64,000 bases of DNA from Botryllus schlosseri (Eukaryota): the NCBI GenBank assembly GCA_051294905.1, contig CM119378.1:13454001-13518000 (forward strand). The letters are read 5' to 3'. Under the pieces are notes generated by a model, which searched no databases, was not told the DNA's origin, and saw nothing but the letters and a program-made list of their open reading frames with translations. A program made the position numbers and the translations under genes. Positions 22,963 to 64,000 of this stretch are shown here, piece by piece. Position 1 is the first letter of the stretch, and the number at the start of each line of letters is the position of its first letter.

Positions 22963-24680
22963 TTACTCTACTGTCGCGGTCATGTCGCCGGAAATCTCAC
23001 TGGGGTTTTCCCCGGTGCATGTGGAGCAATCAGCGCACGCGCAGTCGGTGATTGTGTCGTATTCGTATTCCTCCGATGTGCCGTCTTCGCAAGTCAGGAC
23101 GACAGCGCGGGTTTCCGTCTTGGTCGGATTGCATCGCGAACAACCGGCAGCAATGGCTCCTGCGTAATAGTCAACATACGGTAAAACTAGGCGATAGGTG
23201 GTGAAGTACTTGTACTTTTTCGAGTTACTCAAGTATAGGTTTTGCCAACTTGCACTACTTAGTCAAAGGATTGTGTCTTTAGAATACTCCCACTTCTACT
23301 TGAACAGTTTTTAGGAAAAACTAGACATTGGTTTGTACCAACCTTGCATTATTATGCGAGTGAAATTGTCATGAGAAGCCGCTGTAATTACAATAAATAA
23401 ATATCGTCGCTGTGGAATCAAAGTGGCATATGTTCACTTTTTTCAAATTTCGAGAAAATCAAGTTTGTTGCGAAATTTTCATTTTTTCGGACATATCTTG
23501 GTCACGGTTATGGTTTTCACATTGTTTCAAACTTAACCATGACCAAGATATAGTTAAAAACTTAATTCTTCCAAAATTTGTAAAATAGACATAAGGCACG
23601 ATGTGTTTTGACTGATTCCACTTCTACTGGAACACTTTTGAGGAATAATTACCTCTTACAATTTGGATTTTGAAAAGTAGAAAGTAGTGTCGATGTTGTA
23701 AGCTGGAAACTGGAAACACTTTTATGAGTGAATTGTCTTAAGAACCGCACGGAATGGCTGCTATACTATGGTAACTGAACATATTTTCAAATATTGCCCT
23801 ATTTACAGTGTCATTCGTCCTTTTGCATTACTCGCTAAGATAGATTCTGCAATTTCGAAAGTATCCAATACTGATCAAACCCGCGACCATGTCTACTTTT
23901 TGGAACTATTTAGAAAGACGAAAACATCAAGATGGCCGTTATCGTTATCGTCCTCGGGTTAGGGTAAGTTTTTGGGTTATACAGTCACATGCTGAAGTGA
24001 CGCATGCTGATGTGTTCCATGCTGAACTGTCGTTTTCCATTGTGTCGCATGCTCATATGTCGGGCAACCCTCTGTGGTCCGTGGACATATGAGCATGCGA
24101 CATTACAGCATGCGAGACTTCGGCATGCAACAATTTCGCATGCGACACATGAGCATGTGGGTTAAATTACGGGTTAGGGGTAGGTTAGGGTTGGATTTAT
24201 GGTTTGGTTAGGTTTAGGCTTTAGGTTAGGTTAGGCTAGGTTAGGTTAGGTTAGGCTATGTTTCGGGTTAGGGTAAGTTTTTGGGTTATACAGTCACATG
24301 CTGAAGTGACGCATGCTGATGTGTTCCATGCTGAACTGTCGTTTTCCATTGTGTCGTATGCTCATATGTCGGGCAACCTCTCTCTGTATCTCATACAGTC
24401 CGCATGCTGAACAATATACTAAAAGTCAATGAAGGGAGCGTGGCAGGCTCCTTTGCCTTTGTGAGTCCCGAATTTTCTCCCTGTCCACGCCTGCGACTAT
24501 ATAGCCTATAGCCTATATATATTACAGAGATTTTAAACGAACCGTTAACAGAAGTGGTGGTGACGGCGCAGTTTCCGCCGCAGGTGGCAGTCTTGACCAT
24601 GTCTGGAGACGAGCACAATTTTCCTCCGATGTTGATCTGGAAGAGCTGCTCCACTTCTTGCACCACGCAGCCTTCGATGT
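22963..24680 (-). CDS. Gene B C-terminal cystine knot (CTCK) and acidic tail
   Basis: Exons 24543-24680 and 22963-23186: CVVQE..LCSS..TCGGNC..GCSRCNPTKTE..TCEDG..DCACADCSTC-TGENPSEISGDMTATVE*. The CxGxC and CxC knot motifs are present. Confidence 0.9.
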
Positions 24681-27600
24681 CTGCGCGAGAATACGTAAAG
24701 GCGTGAGCGCCGACAGCAATTGTTCAGCACTGAAGTCACTTCACGACTTCATACTAGAGACTTCTAATTTCTGGGTTTGTGTACTTCCACTTACTCGAGT
24801 GCTAACACTTTTCAGACTACTTTCACTTTAGCTTCGATAAGTATTTCAAAATACAAATTACTTGCTTTTCATGTATTAGAACAGATTGGCAGCGATTTTA
24901 GGAGCGATACTGCCAAGACAATTGGACTATCCAGACCTTATATGACTGTGATGGAAACAGATTATAACCTCGAAAATCGCACCTGTTTTGATTGCAATTT
25001 CACATTCTGAGTTGGTCACAAAGATCTGTCTTGCAATTTTGTAACCCTGCACCGGATTACCAACTGCATTCGATGTCAAAAGTACTCTTTCTGCTTGATG
25101 TACTGATACTTGTACTTGGTAGCGAGTAGAAATTAACAGCATTGCTTCTACTTGAACTAGAGCACCAACAAAAACCACCTCTAATTCTAATGTCATACGT
25201 ATGGTAACATAACAATACTCAACATTCATAACTGAGGGAAAGAGAGCTTCCAAAAATAATTCCATTCTACCTAAGCAAATCAGATCACATTAGACTTGTT
25301 TTAATAAATGAGAAAAAGAATCCGACATCGTAGTTTTATAGCACAGCCAACATGTTACCGGGCAATAACTGGAATCTCATTCTTTACGGTTGTGTATCTA
25401 TTCATGTTACCCCCCGGAAAGCATCATACATTATCCCGTTAGTTTAGCAGCACATAACTCACCGGAACACATGTAGATCGGACAGCCGCAACCATCCTTC
25501 TCCTCAGACGTCAAAGCGACTGTTCCATCCTGGCATTTCGGCGGGTCGCTGCAGCCGTGGCAACCTGAAAAATTTGAATTCTTTGAATTTGCATTTTGAA
25601 AAGTAGAGTGTAGTAGAGTGTCCGTTACTAACGGATTAGGACATTCGACTCTTCAAATTTTCATGGATGTGAAGTCATATTTGGTGATAGGACTGTTGAT
25701 GTACAAAGTTCTTTTCATTTCTCTACTAGTTGCTGACGATTACCACAGACAAGTGCAAGCCGAAAATATATGGGTTTGTTTCAACATGAATATGTCATTC
25801 AATTGTATATCGAAGTGATATACCTCCGAGAATCTCTTCAAATTCTCTAGTTGCTGGCAATTACCACTAACGAGTATTAGCCGAAAGTATTTGGGTTTAT
25901 TTCAATATGAACAGATTATCCAAATGTAGTTCCAATCCAGGTTCCGTATCTCCAAGTCTCTCATCAAATACTCACATTTCAGCGGAATACACTCCTCTGA
26001 GTTCGCAGTTCTGCGAATCGTTCCCTCCGGACAGAAGCAGCCTTCCACTTCCACAGATCCGGTCACGTTGAGGATAGGGTTGTCGCAAGACAAGTCCCGT
26101 TTGGCATCCAAGTCGCATTCTCGGTATTCCTGAGACGCGTGCGGGCATGTCGCATCGAGACAGTTCAGGGCGCTGCGCCACGGGATGCATACTCCGTGCA
26201 TTTCGTTGAGAGACGCATATTGCGCTACGGAGGCCGAGCTGCAGGCGTCGCATTTCCTCGTAAGGTTGCTTTCCAGGGACAAGTCGTAGGCGCATTTCGA
26301 TTTGTAGACGCTGGGGTCGATGTAGGCGTTTGCCTCTTTGAACACGGGGTGCGTGGAGAGGACCTGAAAACAGACATATCATGTGTAATTGTTCAGTGCA
26401 TGTACACTGAATTAAAATTAACAGAAGATAATTTATACACGGCTTGTCAGAACTGTTAGATCTTGACCAACATTATACAAAGAAAAGCTACTTCCAAAAC
26501 TGCAGTCCTGATAGTTTGACAAACTCAGAATTTTACATAATAAGACACCCTCTCATTCAAAATATAACTTCCCTTACCTCACACGGATTCACATCGCACA
26601 CACTACACTTGCTGTGGCTGAGATGACATTTATTGGAGCAGTCGATGCATTCGTCGACGGGCAGCTCCCCACAGTCCGGATATTCGGCTGGTGGTGGGCA
26701 GTCAGGCTCGGTCGGGAAGCAGTTAGGTTCATCATAGTCTCTGGCGAATTTCATCCATCCTTCTCCGAATTTGTCAATGCTGACTTGGTCGGATTTGTCG
26801 GCGATCGCTCGGACGCTGAAATCCTTGTCGCGGAAATCGTCACTGACCTCGTTGTTGCATGAACCTGAATACGTTTGAAGTAAGGTGTTGAAGACTTAAG
26901 ATGAATTCAAACAGATTTATGCATATGGTTGAGTGGCTGTTTTTTTTATCAATCATGTTGTTTCGACATCAATGGTCACTTGCGACTTTCCGACTAATAG
27001 CACGTCCCATTTTGGTTCTAAGCTTTTGTAAAACACTGCTCGCGTTGATTGGATGGCAACGAGAAGCCTAGATAACACTTCAACATTTAGGTGCCGATTC
27101 TGTGGCAGACCAGTCCTACAGAAGTGCTACATGGTACTACAATAATAGTATCAGAACTACAACATAATACTAATAGTAATACAATACACCTCTGAAGGGC
27201 TGGATAAAATCAATCTACATTGAAGTATAAGCAGTCAGTAAATTGAGAATGTGACACAATATTAATCGTAACATTGAATGCTGAAGGCTTTTTGTTACAG
27301 ACTACTTAGTAACCTTCATGCTGCAACAGTATTTAAGTGATGCTTGGTGGTAACATGAAAAGGATCAACAAGGACAATTAAACCAGAATGGTTTTAGCAT
27401 GATTGATGGCCAAAACAACTGAAATATTGAGGTTAAATAATGCTCACATATTGTTTCCTAATCAGTTACCATCATTTCGTAGGAAATATTATTGCTGCGC
27501 AAAATCTAATCTGGAGCGTAGCTTTAGATTATAGGACAACAATGCGCCATTGTGTGAAACCAGTTAAAATATAACGATACAAGAGCAACTGCTGTGTGCT

Positions 27601-30600
27601 TCATATTTGGAAACGGTCATTTCCAATCATGAAAGCGTGTTCGCTTGTGGCGGTATTGAACAATCTCTTACAAACTCTACGAAAATACTTACCGCAGAGT
27701 CCCATCATCTTGCCCTCGAGCGACTCGTAAGGAAGGGTCAGAATCAAAGACTGCATCCATTGTCTCGTTTTGTAGACAATCTCCATGTTGAGAGATCGGA
27801 TTTCGATTTTCAGCTGTTTGTAACCGAATTCCCTGACCGAGACGTCCTTATCCGCCGAGACCCACGGACTGCGGGCACCGATTTCTTCTCCATCCCTGAG
27901 GAACTAGACAAAGAATTTGTATAAACATATAGGATATCGAAACGACCATGTGTGGTATACCCATCTAACAACCACATAGGCCCCACGATATTATCAGTCA
28001 AGAGAAGACGGCAGAAAAATGCACTCAGATTTTATGCAATACCTTGAGTCCGAAAGTGAAGGTGTAGTTCACTTCTCTGTGAATGACGGACATCGTTTTC
28101 AGACAGGAGAGGGACTTCATTCTGGCGCTCTGCCATCTGCACAGTTCGTTGTCGATGATGACTTCGGTTTGGTTGAAACGATATTCCTTCATCAGCGTGT
28201 AGGTGCATTTTCCTTGGTAATCGTACGAGAATCCGTCGAATGTGGTGAAATGCGGGTCGCCGTACGCCTGGCACGTGCCTAGAAATTGGTAGCAGTCGTA
28301 TCTTAAGCGGCATCCAATGGAATAAATGAAAATTCAAATATTCAGTGGCTATTCATGACAAAACATTATCCATAAAATGGACTGACAATACATATGCTGT
28401 AATCACGGATCCTATGTAGCGATGTTTTTATCTATGCACAATACGAATTGTATTGGTATTTTTGCGCTATAATATGGATCAATTCATATTGAAAACCAGC
28501 AAGATCATAACATCATATTTATCATGATGTGACACATTAGTAGTAGGAATGAAACAACTGTATTTAGGAATTACTAACATCCAATTTTCGGTAGTAGATA
28601 TCAATGATTTACCATTCAATCCATTACATTGCCATATACGAGCGACTGGACAAACTTCTAAGGACCGATGTTTGGAATAAGATATTATCCTTTAACACTG
28701 CCCTTTCCATTGTAATTTTAGCTCAGTATTAGAGGAACATATAATTATCATACATGGGCAAACCCATTCTCTGCAGCATCCCTCCTTTGTAGACGCGAGG
28801 TACGGGCTTCCACCATTGACACAAATCGGCTTTTCACTCAGGCACGTGTATGTATCGTACTCCTCAATCCTGTACGAAGACTTCTTGGCGCTTGCATACG
28901 TGCACTGCAGCATTTTACAGTGGTTGTCCTTGTTAATCCACGAAACTCCAAGCTGTGGAAGATTTGACAAATCAAGTATGCGGCTTTTAATCTACACGAA
29001 AGATTTTGTACCTTGCGCGGGATGCCGTTGTAGTCGATGCATTGCATAGTCGAGTCATCAGGAATGCAGACGTATTCAGGACAGCAGCATTTCACGGCTG
29101 ATACGTTTCTGACGGCAATTTGGCCTAGCGGGCATGTGGGCTCGACGCATTTGGTGTAATTACATCCTGTGTAGAGACAAGATCACATGTAGAGATAACA
29201 TTGGTAACATTCTAAATATGTTTCTATAAATAATCATTTATAATTCTTACAATTACCCCTATGCCATAGAAATGATATCAAGTCAATTATATCAAATGGA
29301 TGAAGCCTGCTATGATACTATACTTGCTAGAAGTAAGTGATACAACCATATCAAAGGTCATGCATCTCACCATTAACCACAGATAAGCAGCAATAAGCAC
29401 TCAAATGATCAATGTTTTGTTTACAATGTGTTACGTAGGCTGGAATTCGTTTCTACGTGAAAAGGAATCATACTGAGTTGAAAGCATAAAAAATTACTTT
29501 GGAATAGATCTGAAAAGGAAATATTACAGCAATTCTGTCAACGGTATTACGGGTATATGTAGTGATGGTCAAATTCCATGTCTTTAATTAAATTTCTGAT
29601 TTTAATCCGTCGATCAGAAACATTGTCAATTTACATTCTTTTCAAATATGGGTGTCTAAATCCACCAATGTCACATGTGATGTGTTGTGTATGCAAGTAG
29701 TCATATCAGCAACGCCCTAACACGACATAATGAAAAAATTTCTATCTATTTCTGCTAACAAAACATTCAAAGTTTGTTGATTGAAATAATAAAATCAACT
29801 TACTGCATCCTTGTTGCTTACAGCATCTGTCGACGCTCATATCCATCCAGCTGTAGACATTCTTTTCTGGGTCTTCACACGTTGTAACCTTGGCCGGGCA
29901 CGGTGTGGGTCCTGCAACACAAGACACGCTAAGTACATATGCAAGCCTACAATTTCAACGGCGATACTTACGGCAGCCATAGATCGGACAACCGCAGTCG
30001 TCTTGATCGCCAGTGTCGTAGACTTCGTCACATTCATCCTCACAAGTCTTCTTCGGGCACGGGTTTCTCTCTGTAGTAATGGTATGGAGTTGTAGGTAGA
30101 TTTGTTGTGAGCGACATGACACATACTCTTTTAGCGAGTGCATAAATAGCTTTTATTCACCAGCAACACTTTGCACGTATTACCGATGATTACAGTTGAG
30201 AAAGTTTTTAAAGACAAAATACAAGTTAGCTCTCTTGTTCACCGGACCACAACCTGGATCTCGCCTTCCGACACATGCCACCTTTTTGTCACCTGTTCTT
30301 TTACTATTTATTCAGTGTGCATGCCTCCTTTCTTTACAGTGCCTCGGCCAGGTGGGTGTCTGATTTCGAAGACTACTCCAAGTCATTTCGACACCTTCCT
30401 ATCTTTCAGTGTATCGAAGTCTTGTGGTGTATTGAAATGATGAAATTTTTAGCAATCAATTGAATTTAATATTTCTGTACGTTATTTCTTATCAAGCGTA
30501 CAGAGAACCTTTCGTTTTTATTACTATATTTGTATGTCGAGGCAGCAGTTTGACTGCTTTACATAGTCGAGTTGTTTTGACTGCTTATTATTGCATCGAA

Positions 30601-33600
30601 ATTCTTTCGGTATTTCAAATTGATGAAATTCCTGATGATTCCGATTCTATGACATACATTTAGTCACATAAGATTGACTTGTATCTTTTTCGTCCCATAT
30701 AGAAGAAAAAGGGAAAAGAAAATTGTAATCACGGATACAAAATCGTTAGTATCCTACCGCACGTTCTTTGAAGGCAGTCACATTCATCTCGACTTTCAAC
30801 ACCGGTGAAACAAGCGTCACATTCTTTCGGTTCCGTGCAGATTGTCTTGTTGGCAATGTACGGGCATCCTTCATTGATCGCGGCGTCAACCAGGCAAGTT
30901 CTAGTGTAGCATTTGTCGGCGGGATGTTCCCACTTGATGTTACGGTCGTAAGTGCTGCCGGTTTCGGTCTCGAGACAGTCTTGCGGACATTCGCAGAATC
31001 CCGGGCAGCATTCGTCGCCGGACACTGCAGAGTCCATTTTCAAGACGGTTTTCGGCGTGATGCAGTCAGATGGCTCTGCGATGTCGCATGTGATCGGGTC
31101 TGCATAGCGAAAGAGGTGTGATTATTTTTCGTCGTTTTAATAATTTGATCGTTGCGATCACATCATCATTGTGAAGGTATAATTGATGAGGATATGTAGC
31201 ACAGAACTTGAAGATTGCTTTCGCCACGATATCCATTTCAAGAAGGTATTTATTATAACTCGAAGATTTTCGGGTACCTCTTATCAAGATATATCAGCAC
31301 ACTACAATAATAGCAATGCTTCAGGTAAAAACGACAGAAAAAAGCAAAGCAAAATAATGGGAAATTTTCAGCATTTCATCTTTCAAATAAAAATAAATAT
31401 GATAAACAATAATTACAGATCCAAAAAGTAATATATCAGAGATTCATCGAGATTCAAGACGGCGGGTTGTATATAACTGAAAAAAAATTAGCAACTTACC
31501 ACAAGAGACCACAGGGCATCCACAGGCTGTTTCAGTTGTGACCGCTTTTGTGCATTTCGGGCACGGATCTGGAATGGGACAGCCGATGTCTCTCGCGGCG
31601 GGGCAGAGCGACACATCCTGAGAGCACTGGTCGTAAATCAACGATGCCATCTTGGTGTCCTGAAGCATTTTCCTTGAGGAAAATTAGGAATATTTGAAAA
31701 ATATCAATACAGAAATACATATTATGAAAGATATCCAAGGTTAGAAATCTGTATTCTGCTTGAAATCCCTGCAGTGGTGATATAAGAGGTGGTTAAAATA
31801 GTCAGCCTTGCTACTTAAGTAGAAGTATAAGTACTGCCGTAAATTACCAGTGAATTTGGTTGTCGTTTGCATACTTTTGCCGGTTAATCGAAGATGGCTA
31901 CACCATACTTTTCCAAAGTGCAGAGTAGGTACTTTTGCATAAAAAAAATGTTCTAATAGAAGTAGAAGAAGTCTACAAACATAATCTCTTCAGCAAGTAG
32001 TGCAGGTAGGCAACACCTACTACCTAGTGGAGTACATTGAAAAAGTAGTAATACCTGTAGTCGATCTTGAGGCGAATTTCGTTCCACAGAGCAGCGTTGT
32101 CGATGTTCTTGAAGTCAACCGCCGTGATGTCATAACCCAATTGAGTCAGGACCGAGTCTGGCGGAGTGCACATCATTCGTTGACAGGCGTCATTGTCCAT
32201 CCATACAGAGAAAAGCTGGAAATAGTAAGATATTGGTCAAAGAACAGCAAGATATTTAATTTTAGAAATATAAAATCCTAAAGTCAAAATAAAGCTACAC
32301 GCTCACCTCTCTCTTGACTCCCTTGTAGTAGCATGAGTTGTCACACACTGTAAAAAGAGTTGGCAAAGATTAGATAGTTTGAAGAGCTTCCTGGAGGTAC
32401 AGAACTTCAACATACGATTGAATAGTATATTCATATTGAAATGAAACCGAATATTTTTTGCTATCACTTGTCAGTTGATGACGATTACCCCTGACGAGTG
32501 TCAGCCAAAAATATTGGGGTTCATTTCAATATGGATACACTATTCAAATGTATATCCGAGAGTTTGTTCAGTGTGATGTAAAAATCTTTATACAACACAA
32601 TTAAACCTACTTACCGCAACAGTTTTTCGAAGGGAAACAGTTGTTTTCGGTGGCCAAAGTCGTGATGATCTGGTTCTTTTCTGCGGCGGTACATTGGACA
32701 GGCTCCTTCAGCGGATCTGTTTCGGAAAAAACAACAATATTACCAATTACCAGACTTGGTCAGACCAGTCCGCATTCATACTTAAAGTAAAAGTAAATTC
32801 ATACTCAATTACAAGTAGAGTGGAAATAAGAAATGAAGGTCTTGAAGGTACTCAAGTGTGTAGTTTCAAAAAGTATATTTAGCCAACGGGACCCATAACT
32901 TAACTCGTTAAATGGAGGTGTCTAATTTCTGAAATTGCATGGTGCATTTTCGTGACTGACGCAAAATGATTATGACACTGCAAATGGGTATGGGCGCAAT
33001 TATAGAAATTTGTTCAGTTGTTGTGATACAGGGACTATGTTGCCAAGTCGTTATTACAATTTCACTCCTAAAAGTAATGCGAATACATCCCAAGTACTAC
33101 TGTTTACTTTACAACGTACAAAGCGTAAAAAGAATGTCGTTTTTCCTGAAATAACAGTAAAGTAGATGTGGAAATAGTCAAAAAACTTAGTGCCTTAAGT
33201 AAGTATTGTCAGTACCACCTCAATTACGCAACCACATTTATTACTAGCTTCCACGTGTTTAAACACAGAGTATATAAAAGGTACACTGGTATATAACAGT
33301 TTCCACTTACTGCAAGCGACCGAATCGCAGCCGCACGTGTCAGGCACGATTGTCTTGTTGGTGCACGCCGGGCAGGCTTCCTCCAGGTCGTTTTTACACG
33401 CGTTACGTTCGACAGGTGTGGGGCACACGCCGTTGGCAAAGTCTTCTTCCGAAACGAAGCATTCGAAAAGCTTGCAAGGAGCGGTCCATTGAGTACCGTT
33501 CTAAACAAGCAAAATTAAATGAGACTTTTTTATTGATTGGAGTTGGCAGCGAAACCTACCGGGACTCTGGTACCGTCTTCCTTAACGCAAACCAGGTCGG

Positions 33601-54600: not shown

Positions 54601-57600
54601 ATCCGGGTTCGCATGTTGGCGATGGGCCAGTAGTGCACGGCGCTTGGATTCTTGTCACGACCGGGCATTCGGTCGGGTCAAGCTTTTCCAGATTGTCGAC
54701 GCAGGTGTCCGTGTAACAGCAATTCGATTCTTCCTCGTCTTTGCACCATTCGTTAACCTCACCAGGCTAAACGGAAAAAAAATGATTCTCAAAATGTGAA
54801 TATAATACGGGCACGTGATAACATTACCAGGATGTGTGGCATCAGAGTCCATTCTCCATTTTCTTTGATGGTGCATGTCTCGCACACTGAAATGCAAGGC
54901 AAAAGAAAAATCAGCAAGCCTTCAATGTATCCCTATTTGTCTAACTATAATATGTCACATACCTCCAAATATATACCCACTACTTTCATCATATTAAGTG
55001 TAATCACTAGGGCTAGGCTAAATCAAGCAATATGTATCACGAATCATGTTTCTCAATGTTGAGCTATGGCTATCTGGGTATAGTACATGGAGATTATATA
55101 TTACTGCACTTAGCTTTATACACAATCTAATTGCAAATTTGAGTAGGATACCGATTGCATTCACGATATAATCAGAGAGTACTCACGGCAATAATATTCC
55201 TCAGGACAGCAGTCGTCACCAGTCGGTCTGATTTTGAGTACTTCATGTTCCTTGCAGTTGACTTCCTCAATGTTTTGCGCGCACGGTACACGACTTTCTC
55301 TCTGCATATTTCAAAGGAACCGTGCGTTTTTAAAGGATCAAGATGATATTTTGGTCGATCTACCTGGATGAAGCATTGCGGTTCTGTGGCGAAGGGGTGA
55401 TTCTCGCAGTTGTATTCCACGCAATATGTTTTGGCGCCTCTTTCCGGTGTCGGGAGTACTCTGAAGTGTAACGGGGGCATGAATGGAAATATAAATTATA
55501 AATTGTCATTACAGAGGAAATAAATTCTTAATGTTGCTTTTTGAAGATATATCTCTCTGTTTTGTAAATCGATACTTTATTTTGTATCTCAAACACTACT
55601 GAATTAAAATACTTTTGACACCAAGGATATCACTAGGAGAAGGATTTAACTTGAAACAAACCATAGCTAAAAATGCTTACGGGAACACTTTTCTCCATGC
55701 CTTATCTTCCGGTGTTTTTCCCGCATCGCACGAATCGTTTCGTTCTTTGCAAGCTAGAATTGAAATTTCACATTGAAATCATTGTACACGTTGACCAAGC
55801 CTATATCGGGAACATTTTCAATCTGTTGTTTTTATGCAACACATACACTTAGATAAGAGATGAGTATAGTTTGGGATTTCACAAAAATAAATTTAATGAT
55901 TTTGGCAAGATTAGGATCGGATACATCCTATTTTTAAAGCAAGATTTCAATTTAGAATAGGACATGATAATTTACAATTCTCATGTGACTATTCAATAAA
56001 GTTTCCGTCATTATCGGATATGTGCAATGTGCATAGATTGAAATTGATGCATCTCTAATCCAGAACATCTCAATATCATCCACATGCAATTCCGAGAAAA
56101 AATCATCCTACTATTTTCGCATTCACGGCAGTTCTTGCACGCAGCTGTGGTAGAGTTCCAGCACGATTGGTCGTAGTATCTGTCATCGTACGGCGGGATC
56201 GGGTATTCGTCGCACTCATACAGTTCAATGGTTCCATTGTAGCAAAGATCACCGGTGGTGTCAGCCGCGCACCATTCAACGAGGCAAGAGTCAGTCTCGT
56301 GTGGGAAATAGACAGTTTGACCAGGCTGAAATTTGACAATGTATGAATTGGTTTGCTATTGATGAATAAATGTAAATTCGCGAAAACCAACCTCAACTCG
56401 CAATACAGCGCCTGAAGGTGTCTTACAGAGATCACACTTTTCTGCAATAAGGATGTTTCGAAGTTAGAGCACATCCGACCCATTTTTCAACATGGAAATA
56501 ACCAGAGTTGCCATCGACATATATAAAAAATAAGGATAGCCAAACAATAAGCAGGTGAAAAGGCTCATCGCACCCTCATTGCCGATAATAGGTGGAAAAT
56601 AAGGACACAAGTCAAATATACAGAAAAATCTAGCGAACAAGTACGGTATGGCAACCCTGGATATAACGAGACCTACCGCAAGAGTGGCACATATTTTCCC
56701 GCGAGAACCACGTACACTTTGAGTTCCTTTCGGTTTCGAGAATGCATTTCTGCGTCATCTCATCGAGAATGTAGCCCTGAAACGTTTTTTCATGTTGAAA
56801 CAAAGACGTTAAGACAAAAACGCGGTATTTCGACTTACGGATGGACACTTGGGGAAGCACCCTTCAACACACCATTGCGTGTCAACAGGTTGAAGGCAGT
56901 CGCAGCATGTGTCGGTGATGCAAGTGGCACAAGGTCGGTAGTGCCAGAGGCAGATGTCTTCGTTGTCATTATACTGTTCGCACATGATCGCTGAAAAAGC
57001 ATTTGTATTTCACCAGTGAAATCAACTAATATCTATTGTGACAAGCACTCGTATCCGAAGAGAAAATTCAACGGATTTACGACACTATTTCATTGGCGTT
57101 GGTTGAGAATATAATAGTATTTAGTCATGAGGAAGTATTTCTATTTAGGTTTCACACCAAGTAGTTGCAAATTATCTCCAGGACAACCACCTCTGGTTGT
57201 CCAGCTACCGCAATGTCTTCGTATTAACATGTTATATTAGATAATTCGCACTCAAAAAAGCACGCAACCATCAAGCTAAGCAATATTGAGAAGTTGCTAA
57301 ACATGTTGCATTATATGTAATAGTTCATGGGGAGGGGTGACAAACCAAACACCAGTCGAATCAAAAATTAACTTACGGCATAGACTGTTGGTTCTCCATT
57401 CGATGGCTACCCCCTTGTTGGAGCAAGTGTGTGCGTAGTGAGCAATCGCCGTACAGAGGCATTCACAGTCACCACCGTTATCGCACCCGCACGTATCGTA
57501 CACGCAGATGTCAAAATATTCCTGCGGGTTCACCTAAAATTGCCAAAAACCTCAATGTAAATTTTCTTTCTCGCAATGTCCAGCAGTAAAGATTCATACC

Positions 57601-60600
57601 ACTGAATGACAGGCTGCGAATGGGCCTTCGGAGTCGAGGATGGTGTGGCACTTTTTGTTGGCCCAGTCTTTTCTGGATGCGTCCGAGCACGTAGCGTTGG
57701 CTTGTGTTTCGAAGGTTGTATCGGGACACAATGCTCTTTGTCCGGTGAACTGGAAATGTAGATAGCAGATATGACACAAGCAGTGAGAGTAGACATGGTG
57801 AAATTATGACAGGTTACCCATTAGATTACATTGATTTATTGTAATTGCCCCAATTTACCTAGTACTGAGTAGTCAATGGACACTAGGTAGAGGCAGGGTT
57901 GTAATGACTCGAGTCACGATTTTTTGGTGACTCGACTTGACTCGAGTCATTTTTTCAAATGTGTAAATGACTCGACTCGAGTCAATTTGTGTATTGACTC
58001 GACTTGTACTCCAGTCATTGTGCATGACTCGAACTAAATCATATGACTCGAGACTGGGGCGGACAAGAGTCCAAGACAGACATATTGCAACTTCGAAGAA
58101 TAGTAATAAAGTCACCGTATTACTGATATTTCGTCTATCAGTCCCGATACTTGCAAAATAGGGCAGCGTAATTCCTAGTTACCTTCCAGCTGTTTCCAAA
58201 TTCGAGTACGTTCTTGGTTTTCAAACCAGTCGATTGCATCAGGTCATTTTCGTCGACGCCGTCAAAGTTTCCACACAGACCGCACGTCGTTCTCTAGGAG
58301 CCAAAAGAATCATTATTATCAACAAAAAGGCCATTGCATTCATTTTGGATATCCACCTGGAATTCTTCGGTGAGACGGATGTAGACTCTTGTGCCGTTGT
58401 CCCACAAGACGGTCATGCCGATGCAGGTGTCGATCACGGTGAAGATACCTTTCTGTTTGATGGTGAATGTTTCCGCGACGCTGTGATCGGTGTCGCCAGT
58501 CACGCCGCCAGCATTGATTTGACGAGACTTCTCTCCTCCGATCTTCTCGATGATGGCTTCTTTGCCTCGTTGCAGAATGATACGTTGATTCTGAATGATA
58601 CAGTTGCAGGTATGCCACAGAGATTAGCAATGGGCATTGCTCAGTGAGCAACAAATACGGTATCACAAAGTTCAAAATTGTGGGAAGGGGTGAAAACTAC
58701 CGATTTCAAAGAATTTTAAATATATGTGCGGTAAAATCAAGTGATTACAATTTTGGATATCGTGGCAACACACAACCACAATCCATTAACCGGGAAAAAC
58801 AACTTTTATGCGGAATGCAACAATATTTATAAACCATTATGACATCACGTCGTCATTGTGACATCACAAACGTAAGTGACGTCACACCGTTAAAATTGGA
58901 TATTTATATGTACTCCGAAAAATGTTGATTTATTGATGAATTAAATTTTAGTAAAAATTTAACCTTGACCGAGATGATGATCGATTTCGAGCAGGCCATT
59001 CCAGCGGTACCACATCGTTCGTTACTGGTTACTACGCTGAAGAGACCTTGTCGCGGGTTGTTGGGGCAATAATCCTGAAAAAACGGATCGTTCGGTTCAT
59101 TATATGCGATCTAAAGAATTGCGATATTCGTACGGTTGCCAGAATGTATTCGCAGTCGCCCTCGTAGTCATATCTGAGTCCGTCGAATGATTTGTAATGC
59201 GACGCTCCCACAGCCCAGCATGTTCTCGGGCAAACGAGATCCGTGCGCTTGAATTCGCCGCCGGAACAGGTACTGTAATCAATGCATTGGAATTACATGC
59301 TGAAATGTCAGGAATGAAGTTGCAACGAAAATTGAGTTGCTCTGGTGTTAATGCTTATATGGCAACATCCAATTACCGTATTCCACAATAATATTTGAAC
59401 AGCTTCTTGGAGGTGCAGAACTTCAATATACAATTGAATAGTATATTCATATTATTGAATAGTATATTCATATTGAAATGAACCCGAATATTTTCGGCTG
59501 ACACTCGTCAGGGGTAATCGTCAGCAACTAGTAGCCTAGAGAATTCGAAAGAACAGCGTATATCAACAATCGTAACACAAAATATGACGTCACCAGCACG
59601 AAATGTCGAATACGAGAGCGTTCAATGTACTATTTTAGATGATACACGAACTCTTTTTGTTGACAGAGCCTTGGCTGGTGTATTTTGATAAAAGTCGACT
59701 CCAAGGCACACCAATGAAAGTAGTTGCTGACGATTACCGCTGACGAGCGTCAGCCGAAACTATTCGGGTTCATTTCAATATGAATATACTATTCAACAAT
59801 AATATTTGGCTGTATCGATTCCTTCATATTTTCACTGGTGAAATATAACCAAAGTATATCATCACCGGACATACAACCTCGTCGAAATCGTTATGTGCAA
59901 TAGGCCATTTCGTGCAACCATAATCGCCGATTTAAAACGTTCGAAATTGCACGCACCGTACGCAAGTATTACGTCCGGGTTATGCAACACAAAGCATTAA
60001 TCAACGCCTACACTCCTACATGCATTGAAATTCACCTTGCGCCATTAACGTAAGGGCGTGGCGCATTACCGCATAATTCACATCAACGGCGCTTGATACA
60101 GGCGCACAACTAAAATAGATCGGTCAATGGCATCTCCACGACCTCAATGATAATGAACATAATGTTGAATAGGTCGAGAATGTTAATTAATCGGCTTAGA
60201 CGTACGGTCGCAGAGTGACTGATGTATCATGTATGGATGTGAAAGCTAATTGCGGGAAACTTGCGTATGGCTTGTGTTGTGCAATTTACCGATGGCTGCG
60301 GATCATCAAGCCTTTACTGATCAAACAGCGTGCAAAGTGGAAAGGGTAATTCCTATACCATCGAAGGTATAAAAGAAACAGGTGGTGTTGATAACTCCTT
60401 TCAAGTTGCAACGTTTATACAATTTGAGCATTAGGACAAGTAGCCTAGCCTTGGCGCTGTGAACTGATTCATTCATTCCATCTATTGTTCTCGTCCCTAG
60501 TTCGAAACATTTAATCAACGATTGCACCATCGATATGAAACCATCTCGTCCTGGATGGTTCGGTTTCATAATCGCATTGGGCGTGTCCAGCATACCGATT

Positions 60601-63569
60601 CGCGGAGCCTTGCTGTATATTTCCCTATTTAAACTTACAGGCTCCCAGCACTCAAGCGTTCGGAATAATTTCTGGCTAATGTCGACAAACATGATAAACT
60701 TCGCGTACCCTTATTAACGGATGTCACAAACGTGTCTCGATTTTCAATCAGTAAGAGAGCCGCTTCAAGTAATCTCTAATGTTGGGCATTGTGATGTCAT
60801 CAGCGATATCATGTCATAATTCGATAAAGTAACAAACAGTTTCCCCGTCAATTTTCTAGTTTGGCACCCTGAATTTCGTTGACGTGCTACTCAGATATTC
60901 ATCATTTTAGAACACTCACACTTTGTTGCAGTCGTCCATGAAATATTGTCCGTGCTTGAAGTATTTCTCTCCGTCGAAGCAGCCACATTCCTCTTTGAGA
61001 ACGCAGCTTCCGTCGTAAGATCTGTAGAATCCGGGTTTGCAAGCACATCCTGAGGGATGAATGATGTATTTAGTGAACAAGCGACCATATTTGATCTATC
61101 ATATCAAGCAATCGTTTCAGTGGTTTATTCATCTGTAAGATTATTTTTGCTCACCGGTCATGCAGACACCGGCGGTGCAGAAGTCTTGCGGGTATTGACA
61201 ATTTTTCTCGCATGCTGCGCCTTGGATGTCAGTCGGGTCTTCGCAGGAGTAATACTGCTCGTTTGCGCCGTTGCATGTAGTGGTCACGTCTGAAGTGAAG
61301 GAATATATATTAACTGATGAAGTGGGAAAGTGGCGAGAATGATTTTATTACATCATTGCGAATCTACGTTTCGTTTATGACCTTACAACCAGGTTTAGCG
61401 CACACTCATATTTACATTGTTTACCATGTACGTTGTCGTCTCGATAACGCCTATAGTTCGAAATGTGTGGTATGTACCGCTGTAAATACGTAATATATAA
61501 TTGGACCGCTAGATTAAACGGTACAAGCCAAAAGAATAGGCTACTTATGTGTAATACTACGGCATATTAAATAAAGACAATCAACTTACTCGTTGAGATG
61601 CACTCCATAGCTCCGCCGTTGCAAGTACTGCAATATGATTAACGGGTTACTCGTTTGTATTGATTTCGATAAAAACTTAACGAAACTGGTGCAATTAGAT
61701 GTCAACAGTTTTACATTGAATTCATGAGTCGATTGCTAACGCCGATATGTAAACGCTTGCTTCCACATTCTCGAAAACTAACCATTCTTTGTCTCCGATT
61801 CTCGTCGTTCCAGCCTCGTACCATTCGCCTTCGTAGAGGCACGGGCATTCATCTCTCTGTACGCATTGACCTGGGCACAAGCGAGCGTGTTCAGTGCGCT
61901 GCCGCAATTCAATAATTTACCACCCGCTACCTCTGCCATTTTCGTATTGTCCCTCTGGGCAGAAACACCCAGCGTGTACGTCGAGCAGACAATAGCCGGA
62001 GAAGGAAGAACAGGAGTTGATGCATTCGTTCGATTCGCGGTACACGAACGGCTCCTCGCACTGTACGGCTGTGAAATTCGGTAACTGATATCGACAATAC
62101 GGTACGGCATTAACCCAAGATTTACTCACAGCACTCGTCTTCCAATGTCGAGACAAGGTCGAAGGCGAAGGTTTTTCGCGCTGTGCATGCGGCGTAAAAT
62201 CCGGACTTCATGGAGCACGCGTGAGTAGGCCTTTGGTCGAGTAGCGGAACCAGACAGGCGTATTCTTTGCAGTCGCCGAATCGCTCGATGGAGCCGGGGC
62301 AGTCGCTGAACATGTGGATTTTGCCGCAAATGGCGGTGGTGTCGGCGTCTACGAAAAGAAAAGTACGGGGTGTTAAAGTTTATGAGTTTATACTTTATAC
62401 TGTATGTATAACATTGTAAATATAAATCGTGTACTTCACCGAACTCCACCCTAGCGTTGGGTACAAATACGGCAAACGGTACTTCGTTGTACGGCATTGT
62501 GCACCAATTGCAATGGGTAAAAACGATCCCAGGGGTGGATTGGGTACTATTTTCGTGTACCCGCCTCTCACCAGTAGGCGTGAAAAGGTGACACAAGGGT
62601 ACACAGTAATTGTAAACATAGCCCATGCAACACCTCTGGAATATATCTCTATAAGGAGTGGTAGTGGCGTATTTGACTCGTTATCACACATTTAGGGTTA
62701 CCATACGTCCTTAATTTTTCATGTTTTTAAAAATGTCCTCTGAGGACGCCTGAATATCCACCTTTTTGGCAGTTCTTCCTCTTTTACAGCTAGGATAATG
62801 CACAGGTTCGACTGAAAATCGGCACAAATGACGCTAAATAGCAAATCCGGACGTTCGAGTGGGTAATTCGGTGGTTGATTGAAAGTGGCAACCTTTTTTA
62901 GTCAACTCCACAAATTCCCCAGCCAAAGTAGCAAAATCGGCATTTTTTTTCAGTCTTGACCAACTAACTTTGCTGATTTGATAAAAGTGTCGTCCTTTCC
63001 CGATTCCAAAATATGGTAACCCTAACACATTGGAATGAGTGTTAAAGTATAATTTGGTATCAGAAAGTGGTGATGGCCTGATTACACCTTGCAAGGTGGA
63101 AATCTGGATGCACCTATTTTCCATCCATGTATTTACAGAGTAGGCCTATATTCACCAACTTAGCTAACTATACACTTCCAAAATCCAAAGCTCGCAAACT
63201 CAATATACGATTCTGAGATTATTTTTGAAAGAAATATACTTCGACGCCGTTGTCTTGAAGACACGACGACCTTAATTTAGAACTTACCACAAGTCATTGG
63301 TGGCATTACGAATCGACTTTCGCTACATTTCTTATCGACCTTCCAGTTGTTAGCGAACACGTCTTTGGTTTTCGCCAGCGCGGAGGACTGGAGCCGGAAA
63401 TCGTCGTAGGATCTTCCGTTGTAGTTGCCGGCCAGACCCATGAGCTTTCCGGAATATCCAGGCGACACTTTGACGACGATCGAGGCTACGCGGTCGTAAA
63501 GGATTTGGACGTCTTTTCCTCTGATGGTCAGCAGAACGCTGCCGACTACTTGCTGAATGTCCACCATTC
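22963..63569 (-). CDS. Gene B: giant VWF-like protein (D2 part-D'-D3-about 23 VWC-like modules-D4-cystine knot), about 3,880 aa in the window; 5' end beyond the right edge
   Basis: 80 exons (listed in the sub-features) form one open frame ending TAA at 22963-22965; the summed length of 11,645 nt is phase-consistent. All introns are GT-AG except one GC-AG. VWD, C8, TIL, VWC-like and CTCK cysteine patterns are recognisable. Exons 63569-55364 match gene A exons in length and phase. Confidence 0.93.
23412..23621. mobile_element. Small hairpin MITE
   Basis: Terminal IR GTGGAATCA/TGATTCCAC plus a 17/18 inner IR (23493-23510 vs 23534-23551). Confidence 0.6.
23954..24382. repeat. Direct repeat of about 120 bp (x2) flanking a GCATG-rich hairpin and a (GGTTA/TTAGG)n tract
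   Basis: 23954-24073 matches 24263-24378; hairpin atgctcatatgtc..gacatatgagcat; ttaggttaggttagg tract at about 24170-24260. Confidence 0.8.
25463..31099 (-). CDS. Gene B: last VWC-like modules and D4 assembly (VWD4 with GDPH, C8, TIL) plus short Cys-rich linker
   Basis: Exons 30758-31099, 29972-30070, 29804-29911, 29012-29166, 28754-28952, 28043-28278, 27693-27903, 26578-26864, 25976-26363, 25463-25564. Motifs CTCQAYGDPHFTTFDG, MMGLCGSCNN, CIPWRSALNC, EGCFCPEG. Confidence 0.9.
31500..36784 (-). CDS. Gene B super-repeat R3 (11 exons, 524 aa, 5 VWC-like modules)
   Basis: Exons 36639-36784, 35789-35990, 35119-35237, 34259-34409, 33995-34175, 33560-33665, 33311-33500, 32615-32716, 32307-32347, 32055-32215, 31500-31672. 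Confidence 0.9.
32385..32560. mobile_element. Palindromic MITE family (internally deleted copy)
   Basis: gaatagtatattcatattgaaatgaaaccgaatatt..aatattggggttcatttcaatatggatacactattc; same family at 46950-47060 and 59396-59795. Confidence 0.7.
37390..45630 (-). CDS. Gene B super-repeat R2 (15 exons, 686 aa, 6 VWC-like modules)
   Basis: Exons 45485-45630, 45327-45425, 44433-44538, 44253-44371, 42270-42420, 42028-42211, 41309-41411, 40796-40985, 40635-40736, 40033-40073, 39815-39975, 39022-39194, 38426-38527, 38072-38279, 37390-37562. Confidence 0.9.
38617..38860. repeat. Minisatellite, unit about 94-95 bp, about 2.6 copies
   Basis: Units start atcaaac at 38617, 38712 and 38806. Confidence 0.8.
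42930..43095. repeat. Tandem duplication, unit about 83 bp, 2 copies
   Basis: tatcactt.taaatt.tcaggcagag at 42930 and 43013. Confidence 0.75.
43203..43907. mobile_element. hAT (Buster-like) MITE
   Basis: TIR CAGTGGTTCCCAACC/GGTTGGGAACCACTG; perfect TSD CAATAGAG. Confidence 0.9.
44776..45135. mobile_element. hAT (Buster-like) MITE with ATCGCCCC subterminal repeats
   Basis: TIR CAGTGGTTCCCAA/TTGGGAACCACTG; perfect TSD ATTTAAAA. Confidence 0.9.
46089..52341 (-). CDS. Gene B super-repeat R1 (16 exons, 681 aa, 6 VWC-like modules)
   Basis: Exons 52199-52341, 52043-52138, 51607-51712, 51424-51542, 51216-51360, 50580-50760, 50418-50520, 49303-49492, 48531-48632, 48423-48463, 48202-48362, 47504-47676, 47342-47443, 46750-46790, 46516-46682, 46089-46261. 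Confidence 0.9.
50809..50970. repeat. Tandem duplication, unit about 93 bp, about 2 copies
   Basis: acatagga..ctgtcac....taaatg.agttgttgcaa.cttgaataaaa at 50809 and 50902. Confidence 0.7.
52586..55753 (-). CDS. Gene B: non-repeated VWC-like modules between D3 and the super-repeats
   Basis: Exons 55681-55753, 55364-55460, 55187-55301, 54828-54886, 54547-54766, 53896-53948, 53642-53831, 53463-53515, 52586-52760. They show the xGxxW...C...CC..x.C pattern (PGEVNEW, IGDKWTKKC, TRPGDCCPWGEC). Confidence 0.88.
56112..63569 (-). CDS. Gene B N-terminal block: VWD2 (second half), C8-2, TIL2, E2, TIL'/E', D3 assembly and first VWC-like module
   Basis: Exons 63288-63569, 62130-62348, 61931-62068, 61783-61870, 61590-61627, 61155-61289, 60920-61049, 59134-59272, 58964-59074, 58357-58590, 58183-58293, 57600-57749, 57377-57533, 56839-56990, 56677-56776, 56392-56441, 56112-56325. 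Motifs [55 protein letters not shown]. Confidence 0.92.
59396..59795. mobile_element. Palindromic MITE with inverted arms of about 75 bp
   Basis: 59454-59530 is the reverse complement of 59722-59795; homologous to 32385-32560 and 46950-47060. Confidence 0.8.
62693..63024. mobile_element. hAT (Blackjack-like) MITE
   Basis: TIR TAGGGTTACCATA/TATGGTAACCCTA; flanked by ACACATT on both sides (7-bp duplication). Confidence 0.75.
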
Positions 63570-64000
63570 CTGAATCATTCCAAAGTAAATTTGGATCAGC
63601 ACAAATTTAGTGGTGCTTAGTTTGCATTGATATATCTCGAGAATGGCCAGTTGATCCAAACAGTGCTTGTGAGATAGGTCGTATTGAATGCGGTGGGATG
63701 CGACAGGTGTAATGAGTTAGTATCCAAAAAAAGAAGTTGGCGTCTCGACGAGGTGTTATAAATCATGAATTCAATGTATTGATATAACTCCTTAGAAATC
63801 ATAACGACAAACTTAGCAAAATGCAAGCATATATACCATAAAATAGGCAATATTATCCTCCGAATTCGTTTTTGTAAAAATAAAATAGTCACGGGACACG
63901 TGCTGACCTTACGCAGTTTCGTGAATTGGGCGAACTTGGACATCATTTTCACGCAGTGTGTCACCATGTGTTAGAAAGCAGAAACACCCGGCCAATATAA

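What the first reader, a model, noticed from the sequence alone, without database searches (positions are those of the whole stretch)
22963..63569. Giant VWF-like polymer protein with a rearranged architecture: about 23 VWC-like modules between D3 and D4, no VWA or PTS domain
Seen: the spliced CDS runs D2-D'-D3-about 23 VWC-like modules-D4-short linker-CK, about 3,880 aa without its N-terminus. Established: VWF has A1-A3 between D3 and D4 and its C domains after D4; gel mucins have PTS/CysD there. Here that slot holds about 2,400 aa of acidic, Cys-rich modules, with almost nothing between D4 and CK. Inference: a stiff, disulfide-polymerised filament rather than an O-glycan gel. It is a candidate structural fibre of the tunicate endostyle feeding net (endostyle-specific vWF-like genes are known in Ciona) or of an adhesive/tunic matrix.
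Basis: partly seen in the sequence, partly recalled or inferred. Interest (0 to 1): 0.82.

Follow-up and report, generated by a model that had tools for sequence, protein, structure and literature searches.

The report
Sea-squirt mucin-type polymer with VWC-rod core
A real, transcribed sea-squirt gene of about 80 exons encodes a ~3,850-residue secreted protein. It has the polymerising head and tail of mucins and von Willebrand factor, but its middle is a 2,500-residue chain of 23 small cysteine-rich modules instead of a sugar-coated or collagen-binding region. This layout is unusual and its function is untested.

Summary
On the minus strand, 63569 to 22963, I built a 79-80 exon open reading frame of 3,846-3,856 aa. 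Its order is: end of VWD2, C8, TIL, E, TIL', E', VWD3-C8-TIL-E3, 23 full Cys-rich modules plus about 12 half units, VWD4-C8-TIL, one 34-aa half unit, cystine knot.

- **No VWA or PTS.** The longest Cys-free run in the 2,536-aa array is 55 aa, so neither domain fits.
- **Transcription.** RNA contigs from three runs confirm 12 consecutive GT..AG junctions across the repeats, with no exon skipping.
- **Array structure.** It consists of three old super-repeats of about 686 aa, 35-50% identical to each other.
- **"VWC-like" is only moderately supported.** Pfam stays below threshold. A profile-profile comparison with vertebrate VWC domains gives 89.5% probability with clean controls. The fold search ranks VWF C4 first, but weakly.
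- **Relatives.** A colinear orthologue in another species keeps 103 of 105 aligned cysteines. A tandem paralogue starts about 6 kb downstream.
- **Head and D4** resemble vertebrate MUC5/MUC2 most closely, at about 31-35% identity.

I read it as a PTS-less, disulfide-linked polymer with a rod-like core. The endostyle-net role is plausible from tunicate literature but was not tested here. It is a new variant of a known kind. Two overlapping notes of this scan (s1-234260, s1-234272) agree with what I found.

The parts
22963..63569 (-). Gene 1 as far as the window holds it: 79-80 exons, 3,846-3,856 aa, with the N-terminus (D1 and most of D2) beyond the window end
   Evidence: DP gene model curated with paralogy and RNA junctions. 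One continuous frame and one stop.
63288..63569 (-). Last exon of VWD2. It carries GLAGNYNG where VWF and mucins have CGLCGN.
   Evidence: Pfam VWD E 1.7e-7, profile positions 95-154. Motif scan.
60920..62348 (-). C8-2, TIL-2, E2, TIL', E' (aa 94-360). No furin R-x-K/R-R site.
   Evidence: Pfam TIL on 61920-62207 and 60919-61095. tblastn colinear with dog MUC5AC. Motif scan.
58183..59272 (-). VWD3, with CGLCGNFDG and an insertion of about 18 aa
   Evidence: Pfam VWD E 8.6e-9 and 1.1e-5. Alignment with four vertebrate D3 assemblies.
56112..57749 (-). C8-3, TIL-3, E3.
   Evidence: Pfam C8 E 9.9e-17. Exon search. Of 44 Cys columns shared by four vertebrate D'D3, 38 are Cys here.
52586..55753 (-). 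Modules A1-A4, four unique VWC-like modules (aa 811-~1154). The 30-nt exon 54253-54224 is doubtful.
   Evidence: Segmentation. The first A1 exon is conserved in gene 2 at 156-84. Doubtful exon.
46089..52341 (-). Super-repeat 1: half unit, B1-B4, then two rounds of half unit plus B5 (six full modules)
   Evidence: Internal blastp, 35-50% identity at offsets of about 686 and about 1,372 aa. Alignment. RNA junctions from 49493 down to 46089.
37390..45630 (-). Super-repeat 2, six full modules. One intron is lost (208-nt fused exon 38279-38072).
   Evidence: RNA junctions 45630-44252.
31500..36784 (-). Super-repeat 3, five full modules. One intron is lost (202-nt exon 35990-35789). A single RGD sits in B2c.
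28754..31099 (-). Tail: half unit, T1 (a whole module within the 342-nt exon), three half units, T2
   Evidence: AF2 model of T1. Orthologue L001 is colinear and keeps all cysteines here.
25976..28278 (-). D4 assembly: VWD4, C8-4, TIL-4
   Evidence: Pfam VWD E 6.1e-14, C8 E 4.1e-7, TIL E 0.0037. Best library hits are the D4 of vertebrate mucins.
25463..25564 (-). The only unit between D4 and CK: a half unit of about 34 aa
   Evidence: Also present in P0002 and L001.
22963..24680 (-). C-terminal cystine knot in two exons (24680-24543, 23159-22963) plus stop. The motif is C-S-R-C where vertebrates have C-x-C-C.
   Evidence: Pfam DAN E 3.8e-6, Cys_knot E 0.0012. Alignment.
1..16100 (-). Gene 2, a tandem paralogue: VWD1 (with CGLCGN), C8-1, TIL-1, VWD2 ... 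E3, then the first A1 exon. It runs off the low end of the window.
   Evidence: tblastn of gene 1 gives 42-86% identity per exon, mostly 65-86%. Mucin N-termini. Translations. DP model.

Best explanation
This gene encodes a secreted, PTS-less member of the gel-forming-mucin / von Willebrand factor superfamily. It most likely forms disulfide-linked linear polymers whose repeating unit is a long, acidic, disulfide-stapled rod.

**Shown here**
- One transcribed gene.
- Head of D2-D'-D3-E3, with D1 inferred from the paralogue.
- Core of 23 VWC-like modules plus about 12 half units (2,536 aa, 314 Cys).
- Then D4, one half unit and a cystine knot.
- No VWA, PTS or CysD domain and no furin site.
- The disulfide framework is conserved in an orthologue.

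**Inferred from how VWF and MUC2/MUC5 assemble (my own knowledge)**
- Tail-to-tail dimers form through the cystine knot in the ER.
- Head-to-head disulfides form through D3 in the acidic Golgi. D1-D2 helps and stays attached, as in mucins.
- With few O-glycan sites, the product would be a thin filament or mesh, not a hydrated gel.

**Sub-hypothesis (about 0.25-0.3)**
- It is a structural fibre secreted by the glandular zones of the endostyle into the feeding net or pharyngeal mucus.
For: - **Gene model and frame:**
- **Pfam D assemblies and CK:**
- **RNA:** three runs give 12 consecutive GT..AG junctions. One 2,198-nt contig crosses the repeats without skipping, at assembler word depth 70-144.
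- **D'D3:** 38 of the 44 Cys columns shared by four vertebrate D'D3 are Cys here. They include the Cys after WRTxxL and the one before VEGC. From memory, I take these to be the counterparts of VWF Cys1099 and Cys1142.
- **CGLC motifs:** CGLCGNFDG in VWD3 and CGLCGN in VWD1 of the paralogue.
- **CK** aligns with mucin and lamprey knots.
- **No room for VWA or PTS:** longest Cys-free run 55 aa, Ser/Thr/Pro at most 33%.
- **Modules related to VWC:**
  - hhalign 89.5%, E 2e-6, with controls scoring 10.2 or less.
  - Nearest ESM clusters are VWC/VWC2L/chordin-like families.
  - Fold hits are led by VWF C4 and C6, NELL2, single-VWC venom peptides, chordin, BMPER and KCP.
- **Purifying selection:** orthologue L001 keeps 103 of 105 aligned Cys at 31-72% non-Cys identity, and the HSP breaks at intervening non-coding sequence in L001 match the query's exon boundaries.
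- **Endostyle idea, literature only:** the CiVWFL genes are endostyle-specific (PMC8462739). Botryllus BvWF is expressed in endostyle zones 2 and 4 (PMC2527998).
Against: - No signal peptide was seen, because the N-terminus of gene 1 lies outside the window and that of gene 2 was not resolved.
- D2 has GLAG instead of CGLC in both paralogues.
- The knot lacks the middle Cys of C-x-C-C in this gene and in both relatives. Dimer and multimer chemistry may therefore differ from VWF.
- VWC homology is below Pfam's threshold and weak by fold: TM 0.41, Z 3.7.
- Polymerisation, rod shape and tissue are all untested.
- No named tunicate protein appeared among the 30 library hits of the D4 exon. A link to the published endostyle vWF-like genes is therefore unproven.
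Confidence: 0.62

Rival explanations
1. It is an extracellular regulator of BMP/TGF-beta-type ligands, like kielin/chordin-like protein, BMPER/crossveinless-2 or chordin. The many VWC modules would bind growth factors. The D and CK domains would only tether or oligomerise it.
For: The segment 'VWC array followed by VWD-C8-TIL' matches the KCP/BMPER layout (my own knowledge). The nearest ESM clusters include VWC2L and chordin-like 2. Fold hits include chordin, BMPER and KCP.
Against: - The full mucin-type D1-D3 head and the CK tail are polymer machinery that KCP and BMPER lack.
- The D4 exon finds mucin, FCGBP and zonadhesin D assemblies, not BMPER or KCP.
- Most modules lack the canonical CxxCxC and CCxxC motifs.
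- Five modules carry a 53-55-aa insert.
Confidence: 0.1
2. It is a haemocyte or wound adhesive: a clotting or encapsulation polymer used like VWF or insect hemolectin in tunic injury or allorejection.
For: Botryllus vWF-like transcripts appear in macrophage-like blood cells during rejection (PMC2527998). One RGD lies in module B2c. The protein has polymer-forming ends.
Against: There are no VWA (collagen or GPIb-type binding) or discoidin domains. The RGD occurs in one of three repeat copies only. No expression data by tissue were available.
Confidence: 0.13
3. It is an ordinary gel-forming mucin or VWF orthologue whose PTS or VWA exons were missed, or the model joins two genes.
For: Gene models built without full-length cDNA can miss exons. 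I found one missed exon myself. One 30-nt exon remains doubtful.
Against: - The largest intron is 1,832 nt.
- No intronic minus-strand ORF of 50 aa or more is rich in Ser/Thr/Pro or of VWA size.
- RNA contigs join consecutive repeat exons.
- The frame stays open through 79 exons.
- The orthologous contig has the same order: B5, tail modules, D4, half unit, CK.
Confidence: 0.03

Closest known systems
Vertebrate gel-forming mucins MUC5AC / MUC5B / MUC2
   Same: D1-D2-D'-D3 head, D4 and CK tail, and no furin cleavage after D2. These are the best sequence matches. The head is 31-33% identical over about 700 aa and D4 is 25-35%.
   Different: No PTS or CysD domain. The slot between D3 and D4 holds 23 VWC-like modules. 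The VWC domains that mucins carry after D4 are reduced to one half unit.
von Willebrand factor
   Same: Overall logic of D assemblies, C-type modules and CK. CGLC is present in VWD3. The C-type modules would form an extended stem. The best fold match of a module is VWF C4.
   Different: No A1-A3 domains. No propeptide furin site. The C modules lie before D4, not after it, and number 23 rather than 6. D2 lacks CGLC, and the knot lacks one of the interchain cysteines.
PTS-less relatives of mucins: alpha-ovomucin, otogelin, spiggin (from my own knowledge; domain lists for otogelin and others in PMC4948705)
   Same: Mucin-type D assemblies and CK without an O-glycan domain, used as structural or adhesive extracellular polymers.
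   Different: None of these is described with a long VWC array between D3 and D4. Otogelin has an AbfB-type domain there.
Kielin/chordin-like protein and BMPER
   Same: A run of VWC modules directly followed by VWD-C8-TIL.
   Different: They lack the D1-D3 head and the CK tail, and they act as BMP modulators rather than polymers. The D4 here is of the mucin type by sequence.
SCO-spondin (Reissner fibre)
   Same: N-terminal VWD assemblies, a very long array of small Cys-rich modules instead of PTS, and a C-terminal CK. It forms a fibre, not a gel (my own knowledge; domain note in PMC4948705).
   Different: SCO-spondin's array is LDLa, TSR and TIL modules, and none of these was seen here.
Ciona CiVWFL1/2 and Botryllus BvWF
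   Same: Tunicate vWF-like genes with endostyle zone 2/4 expression (PMC8462739, PMC2527998). They are the natural candidates for relatives.
   Different: The two Ciona genes lie on different chromosomes, while the two genes here are in tandem. No named tunicate protein was among the D4-exon hits.

Membership tests
Gel-forming mucin / VWF superfamily | Three or more VWD-C8-TIL assemblies | tested here: met
   Pfam VWD, C8 and TIL for D2 (end), D3 and D4. D1 is present in the paralogue.
Gel-forming mucin / VWF superfamily | C-terminal cystine knot | tested here: met
   Pfam DAN E 3.8e-6 (above its cut-off) and Cys_knot E 0.0012. Aligns with mucin knots. One interchain Cys position is not Cys.
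Gel-forming mucin | PTS (Pro/Thr/Ser-rich O-glycan) domain | tested here: not met
   Ser/Thr/Pro reaches at most 33% in any 60-aa window. The longest Cys-free run in the core is 55 aa. No intronic ORF is Ser/Thr/Pro-rich.
von Willebrand factor proper | VWA domains A1-A3 between D3 and D4 | tested here: not met
   Pfam found no VWA on 40 exon pieces. There is no room for a domain of about 180 aa with few Cys.
von Willebrand factor proper | Furin site after D2, and C1-C6 between D4 and CK | tested here: not met
   No R-x-K/R-R anywhere in the protein. Only one half unit of about 34 aa lies between TIL-4 and CK.
VWC domain (PF00093) | Pfam gathering score | tested here: not met
   Best E values are 0.035 and 0.13 (14.8 and 13.1 bits against a cut-off of 27.6), and SVWC gives 0.055. 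These were exon pieces only, because spliced modules could not be submitted.
VWC domain (PF00093) | Profile-level homology over the whole domain | tested here: inconclusive
   Full modules against 27 vertebrate VWC give prob 89.5%, E 2e-6, 59 columns, with controls at 10.2 or less. The exon-fragment alignment gives only 26.7%, E 7e-4. A VWC HMM scores about 0 against the protein.
VWC domain (PF00093) | Two-subdomain VWC fold | tested here: inconclusive
   AF2 with an 18-row alignment gives pLDDT 71.7. The top PDB hits are VWF C4 (TM 0.41, Z 3.7) and C6. Collagen IIA VWC gives Z 2.3. None is significant.
Kielin/chordin-like / BMPER | VWC array followed by a single VWD-C8-TIL, with no D1-D3 head and no CK | tested here: not met
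   The array-then-VWD order is present, but so are the D2-D'-D3 head and the CK.
Ciona vWFL1/2 orthologue | Reciprocal best match to KY.Chr1.1785 or KY.Chr10.1161 | not testable with these tools
   The sequences could not be fetched. The length filter of the search for homologous proteins excludes full-length proteins when the query is an exon.

The most novel reading that the evidence does not exclude
This protein and its tandem paralogue are the long-sought structural fibre of the ascidian endostyle feeding net. It would be a mucin-derived polymer that swapped its O-glycan domain for a rod of 23 VWC-type modules, some 100 nm long. Head-to-head and tail-to-tail disulfide linking would then yield thin filaments of fixed spacing rather than a gel.
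Probability: 0.2. Interest if true: 0.75.

Novelty: new variant of a known kind. Interest (0 to 1): 0.5.

Why it matters
Mucins and VWF share one polymerisation machine and differ in what sits between D3 and D4: a sugar brush, or adhesive A domains. This gene shows a third solution in the sister group of vertebrates, a long chain of small disulfide-stapled modules, with the usual post-D4 C domains almost gone.

If the protein polymerises as its ends predict, it offers two things. It is a natural test of how the spacer sets polymer mechanics. It is also a concrete molecular candidate for tunicate extracellular fibres (feeding net, clot or tunic). I found no compositional or proteomic study of the net in the paper library.

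It also documents how large VWC arrays grow: by duplication of a seven-to-nine-module, multi-exon cassette.

Tried and rejected
- **Pfam on 40 exon pieces.** D domains and CK were found. Core modules stayed below threshold.
- **Module-exon profile against PDB sequences.** No hit even at E 10.
- **Single-sequence AF2 of the T1 exon.** Failed, pLDDT 36.
- **Module HMM against the 30 library hits.** Nothing.
- **Vertebrate VWC HMM against the protein.** Scores near 0.
- **blastp of the model against all hits.** No match anywhere in aa 760-3250.
- **The search for homologous proteins with the T1 exon.** No candidate. With P0002 it found only itself.
- **The one representative-library search (D4 C8-TIL exon).**
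  - 30 hits, and no named tunicate protein among them.
  - The window's own protein is not there.
- **Looking up SRR10746996/7 in papers.** Nothing.
- **Filtering sequencing runs by the word 'endostyle'.** Not possible; the filter takes fixed library terms only.
- **Homology-bonus DP.** It ran exons into introns. I went back to the plain model and corrected it by hand with RNA junctions.
- **Rejected readings.**
  - Assembly duplication: the repeats are only 35-50% identical.
  - Missed PTS or VWA exons.
  - Two merged genes.
Full report
**Observation**

Cys-rich stop-free segments lie overwhelmingly on the minus strand, 93 against 37. I trained codon log-odds on those segments, scored GT and AG sites, and chained exons by dynamic programming. 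This gave a first open frame of 76 exons and 3,782 aa, running from an acceptor at 63569 to a stop ending at 22963.

I then curated the model in five ways:
- alignment of the internal repeats;
- RNA junctions;
- local splice-site searches;
- one exon, 56776-56645, that the model had missed and that is conserved in the neighbouring paralogue;
- removal of a doubtful 30-nt exon.

The result is 79-80 exons and 3,846-3,856 aa. All introns are GT..AG. Median intron length is 300 nt, many introns are 57-61 nt, the largest is 1,832 nt, and half are phase 1.

**Domains at the two ends**

Pfam on exon pieces gives the following:

| Domain | Window coordinates | E-value |
|---|---|---|
| VWD | 63280-63606 | 1.7e-7 (profile positions 95-154, the end of the domain) |
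| TIL | 61920-62207; 60919-61095 | 0.012; 2.8e-5 |
| VWD | 59035-59292; 58141-58293 | 8.6e-9; 1.1e-5 |
| C8 | 57300-57533 | 9.9e-17 |
| VWD | 28028-28333 | 6.1e-14 |
| C8 plus TIL | 25905-26378 | 4.1e-7; 0.0037 |
| DAN / Cys_knot | 22966-23262 | 3.8e-6 / 0.0012 |

- tblastn of dog MUC5AC places the first exon at the end of VWD2 and the rest colinearly through D' and D3.
- An alignment of D'D3 with four vertebrate proteins keeps 38 of the 44 universally conserved cysteine columns.
- There is no R-x-K/R-R site in the whole protein.
- VWD3 has [12 protein letters not shown]2 has GLAGNYNG and VWD4 has GLCGSCNN.

**The core**

Between E3 and VWD4 lie 2,536 aa (aa 811-3346) with 314 cysteines. Composition is 12.4% Cys, 17.0% Asp+Glu and 10.4% Lys+Arg.

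- Chunked blastp shows three super-repeats at offsets of about 686 and about 1,372 aa, 35-50% identical to each other.
- Inside them is a 175-aa sub-repeat present 2, 2 and 1 times.
- I segmented the core into 23 full modules, each 74-94 aa, or 124-126 aa for the five B5 copies:
  - A1-A4;
  - B1, B2, B3, B4, B5 and B5' in super-repeats 1 and 2;
  - B1-B5 in super-repeat 3;
  - T1 and T2.
- About 12 short units with 4-6 cysteines resemble the second half of a module. One further such unit is the only sequence between TIL-4 and the knot.
- The longest Cys-free run in the core is 55 aa, which is the B5 insert. The richest 60-aa Ser/Thr/Pro window is 33%. None of the 50 minus-strand intronic ORFs of 50 aa or more looks like VWA or PTS.
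- The claim 'no VWA or PTS' therefore rests on lack of space as well as on lack of Pfam hits.

**Are the modules VWC?**

All 23 modules align to one pattern: C-x2-4-C, D/N-G, G-x-x-W, C-x3-C, three single Cys, then C-(G)-C-x3-4-C.

*Against:*
- Pfam gives only VWC E 0.035 and 0.13, and SVWC 0.055.
- A profile of module exons finds nothing among PDB sequences.
- A VWC HMM built from Pfam-verified vertebrate domains scores about 0 on the protein.

*For:*
- hhalign of the 23-module alignment against 27 vertebrate VWC domains gives 89.5% probability, E 2e-6, score 31.8 over 59 columns. The reversed template and 30 column-shuffled templates score 10.2 or less.
- The nearest ESM Atlas clusters are VWC, VWC2L, chordin-like and NELL families. 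The score is 0.83, which is a lead only.
- An AF2 model of the single-exon module T1 with an 18-row alignment reaches pLDDT 71.7.
- Its top PDB matches are VWF C4 and C6, then NELL2.
- By VIA-align, VWF C4 is first at Z 3.7 and collagen IIA VWC scores Z 2.3.
- In Swiss-Prot models the top matches are single-VWC venom peptides, mucin and otogelin C domains, chordin, BMPER and KCP, all with TM about 0.4.

*Weaker repeat:* the same profile comparison on exon fragments gives 26.7%, E 7e-4.

*Verdict:* these are divergent VWC-type modules. This is probable, not proven.

**Transcription**

RNA runs of the same species hold 6-13% of the sampled words of a 9-kb stretch. On 44100-50099, contigs from three runs give 12 consecutive junctions, all CT..AC on the plus strand. 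The exons they bound are:

- 49303-49493
- 48531-48632
- 48423-48463
- 48202-48362
- 47504-47676
- 47342-47443
- 46750-46790
- 46516-46682
- 46089-46261
- 45485-45630
- 45327-45425
- 44433-44538
- 44253-44371

One 2,198-nt contig spans them without skipping. These junctions corrected two of my exons and confirmed the rest. They also show that intron positions are conserved between repeat copies.

**Relatives**

The one exhaustive library search used the C8-4/TIL-4 exon and gave only 30 hits.
- The named hits are vertebrate MUC5AC, MUC5B, MUC2, zonadhesin/FCGBP and a lamprey protein. Also named are a sea-urchin scavenger-receptor (SRCR) protein and a spider-mite 'von Willebrand factor-like' TIL protein. 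None is a tunicate protein.
- None matches aa 760-3250 of the model.
- Two short Logan hits led to an 8.7-kb genomic contig of another species (L001; L002 is its twin). It is colinear with aa 2893-3834: half unit, B5, tail modules, T2, D4, half unit, CK. It keeps 103 of 105 aligned cysteines at 31-72% non-Cys identity. The HSP breaks at intervening non-coding sequence in L001 match the query's exon boundaries.
- A 1.5-kb marine metatranscriptome contig (L003/P0002) is 39% identical over C8-4 to CK and has the same short linker.
- All three relatives have C-S-R/T/S-C where vertebrate knots have C-x-C-C.

In the window itself a tandem paralogue occupies about 16100 to 1 on the same strand. It carries VWD1 with CGLCGN, C8-1, TIL-1, VWD2 with GLAG, D', D3, E3 and the first A1 exon. 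Per exon it is 42-86% identical to gene 1, mostly 65-86%.

**Interpretation**

- The ends are those of a mucin-type polymer.
- The best-supported mechanism is CK dimerisation plus D3 multimerisation. D1-D2 would stay attached because there is no furin site.
- That mechanism is inferred from VWF and MUC2/MUC5 biology, not shown here.
- The core replaces the O-glycan brush, or the A domains, with a chain of small disulfide-stapled modules. A thin, extended, acidic filament is therefore more likely than a gel.

*Caveats:*
- no signal peptide was seen;
- D2 lacks CGLC;
- one interchain knot cysteine is missing across the family.

*Tissue:* notes from other agents of this scan call the genome an ascidian (I did not test this). 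Tunicate vWF-like genes are endostyle-specific in Ciona (PMC8462739). In Botryllus they are expressed in endostyle zones 2 and 4 and in blood cells during rejection (PMC2527998). Ciona has 17 multi-VWD proteins, most of them unstudied (PMC4948705). This makes the endostyle reading reasonable but untested. A clotting role and a KCP/BMPER-like growth-factor role remain open rivals.

**Novelty and score**

Every part is a known domain type in a well-known superfamily, and tunicates are known to have many multi-VWD genes. The arrangement is different: 23 VWC-type modules between D3 and D4, almost nothing between D4 and CK, and no PTS or VWA. I did not find this arrangement in the proteins or papers I could reach, and it is conserved in at least one other species. 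I rate it a new variant of a known kind, interest 0.5.

Noticed in passing
window 1-16100, minus strand: A tandem paralogue (gene 2) with D1-D2-D'-D3-E3 and the first A1 exon. Per exon it is 42-86% identical to gene 1, mostly 65-86%. It runs off the low end of the window, and its signal-peptide exon was not found. The N run at 7426-7568 lies in one of its introns.
   Followed up: partly
window 23033-23159 (CK exon); L001 7449-7577; P0002 C-terminus: The knot motif C-x-C-C of vertebrate mucins and VWF reads C-S-R-C here, C-S-T-C in the orthologue and C-S-S-C in the metatranscriptome relative. The loss of this interchain-type cysteine is therefore a family trait, not a local mutation.
   Followed up: partly
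window 63430-63460 (gene 1 VWD2) and 11283-11567 (gene 2 VWD2): Both paralogues have GLAGN(Y/F)NG where VWF and mucin D2 have CGLCGN. VWD1 of gene 2 (13633-13854) and VWD3 keep CGLC.
   Followed up: partly
window 46906-47055; copies at 59398-59574, 59724-59796, 25686-25838, 32382-32555: A repeat of about 150 bp, 77-85% identical between copies and once found as an inverted pair, sits in several introns. It has very high RNA word depth (thousands), so it is probably a dispersed MITE-like element expressed elsewhere. Two further high-depth spots, at 44700-45100 and 49700-50100, have little or no copy in the window.
   Followed up: partly
window 38072-38279, 35789-35990, 30758-31099: Introns lost within repeat copies. 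A 41-nt and a 167-nt exon are fused to 208 nt in super-repeat 2. A 99-nt and a 106-nt exon are fused to 202 nt in super-repeat 3. T1 lies whole within a 342-nt exon.
   Followed up: no
window 35119-35237 (module B2c, aa ~2654): The only RGD in the protein. The equivalent positions in the other two super-repeats read SGE and PGQ, so it is not a conserved feature.
   Followed up: no
aa 1580-1632, 1739-1793, 2266-2318, 2425-2479, 2951-3003 of the model (window 31500-48362): Five B5 modules carry a 53-55-aa Cys-free insert between the two halves of the module. It is partly acidic and has a conserved pattern (L-G-Y/F, D-F/Y, K-M-L). The orthologue L001 has it too. Its fold and role are unknown.
   Followed up: partly
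P0007 (lamprey XP_078475850.1): This lamprey 'uncharacterized' protein has the classical order D1-D3, PTS, D4, then eight VWC domains and CK. It is a useful contrast for where VWC arrays normally sit.
   Followed up: partly
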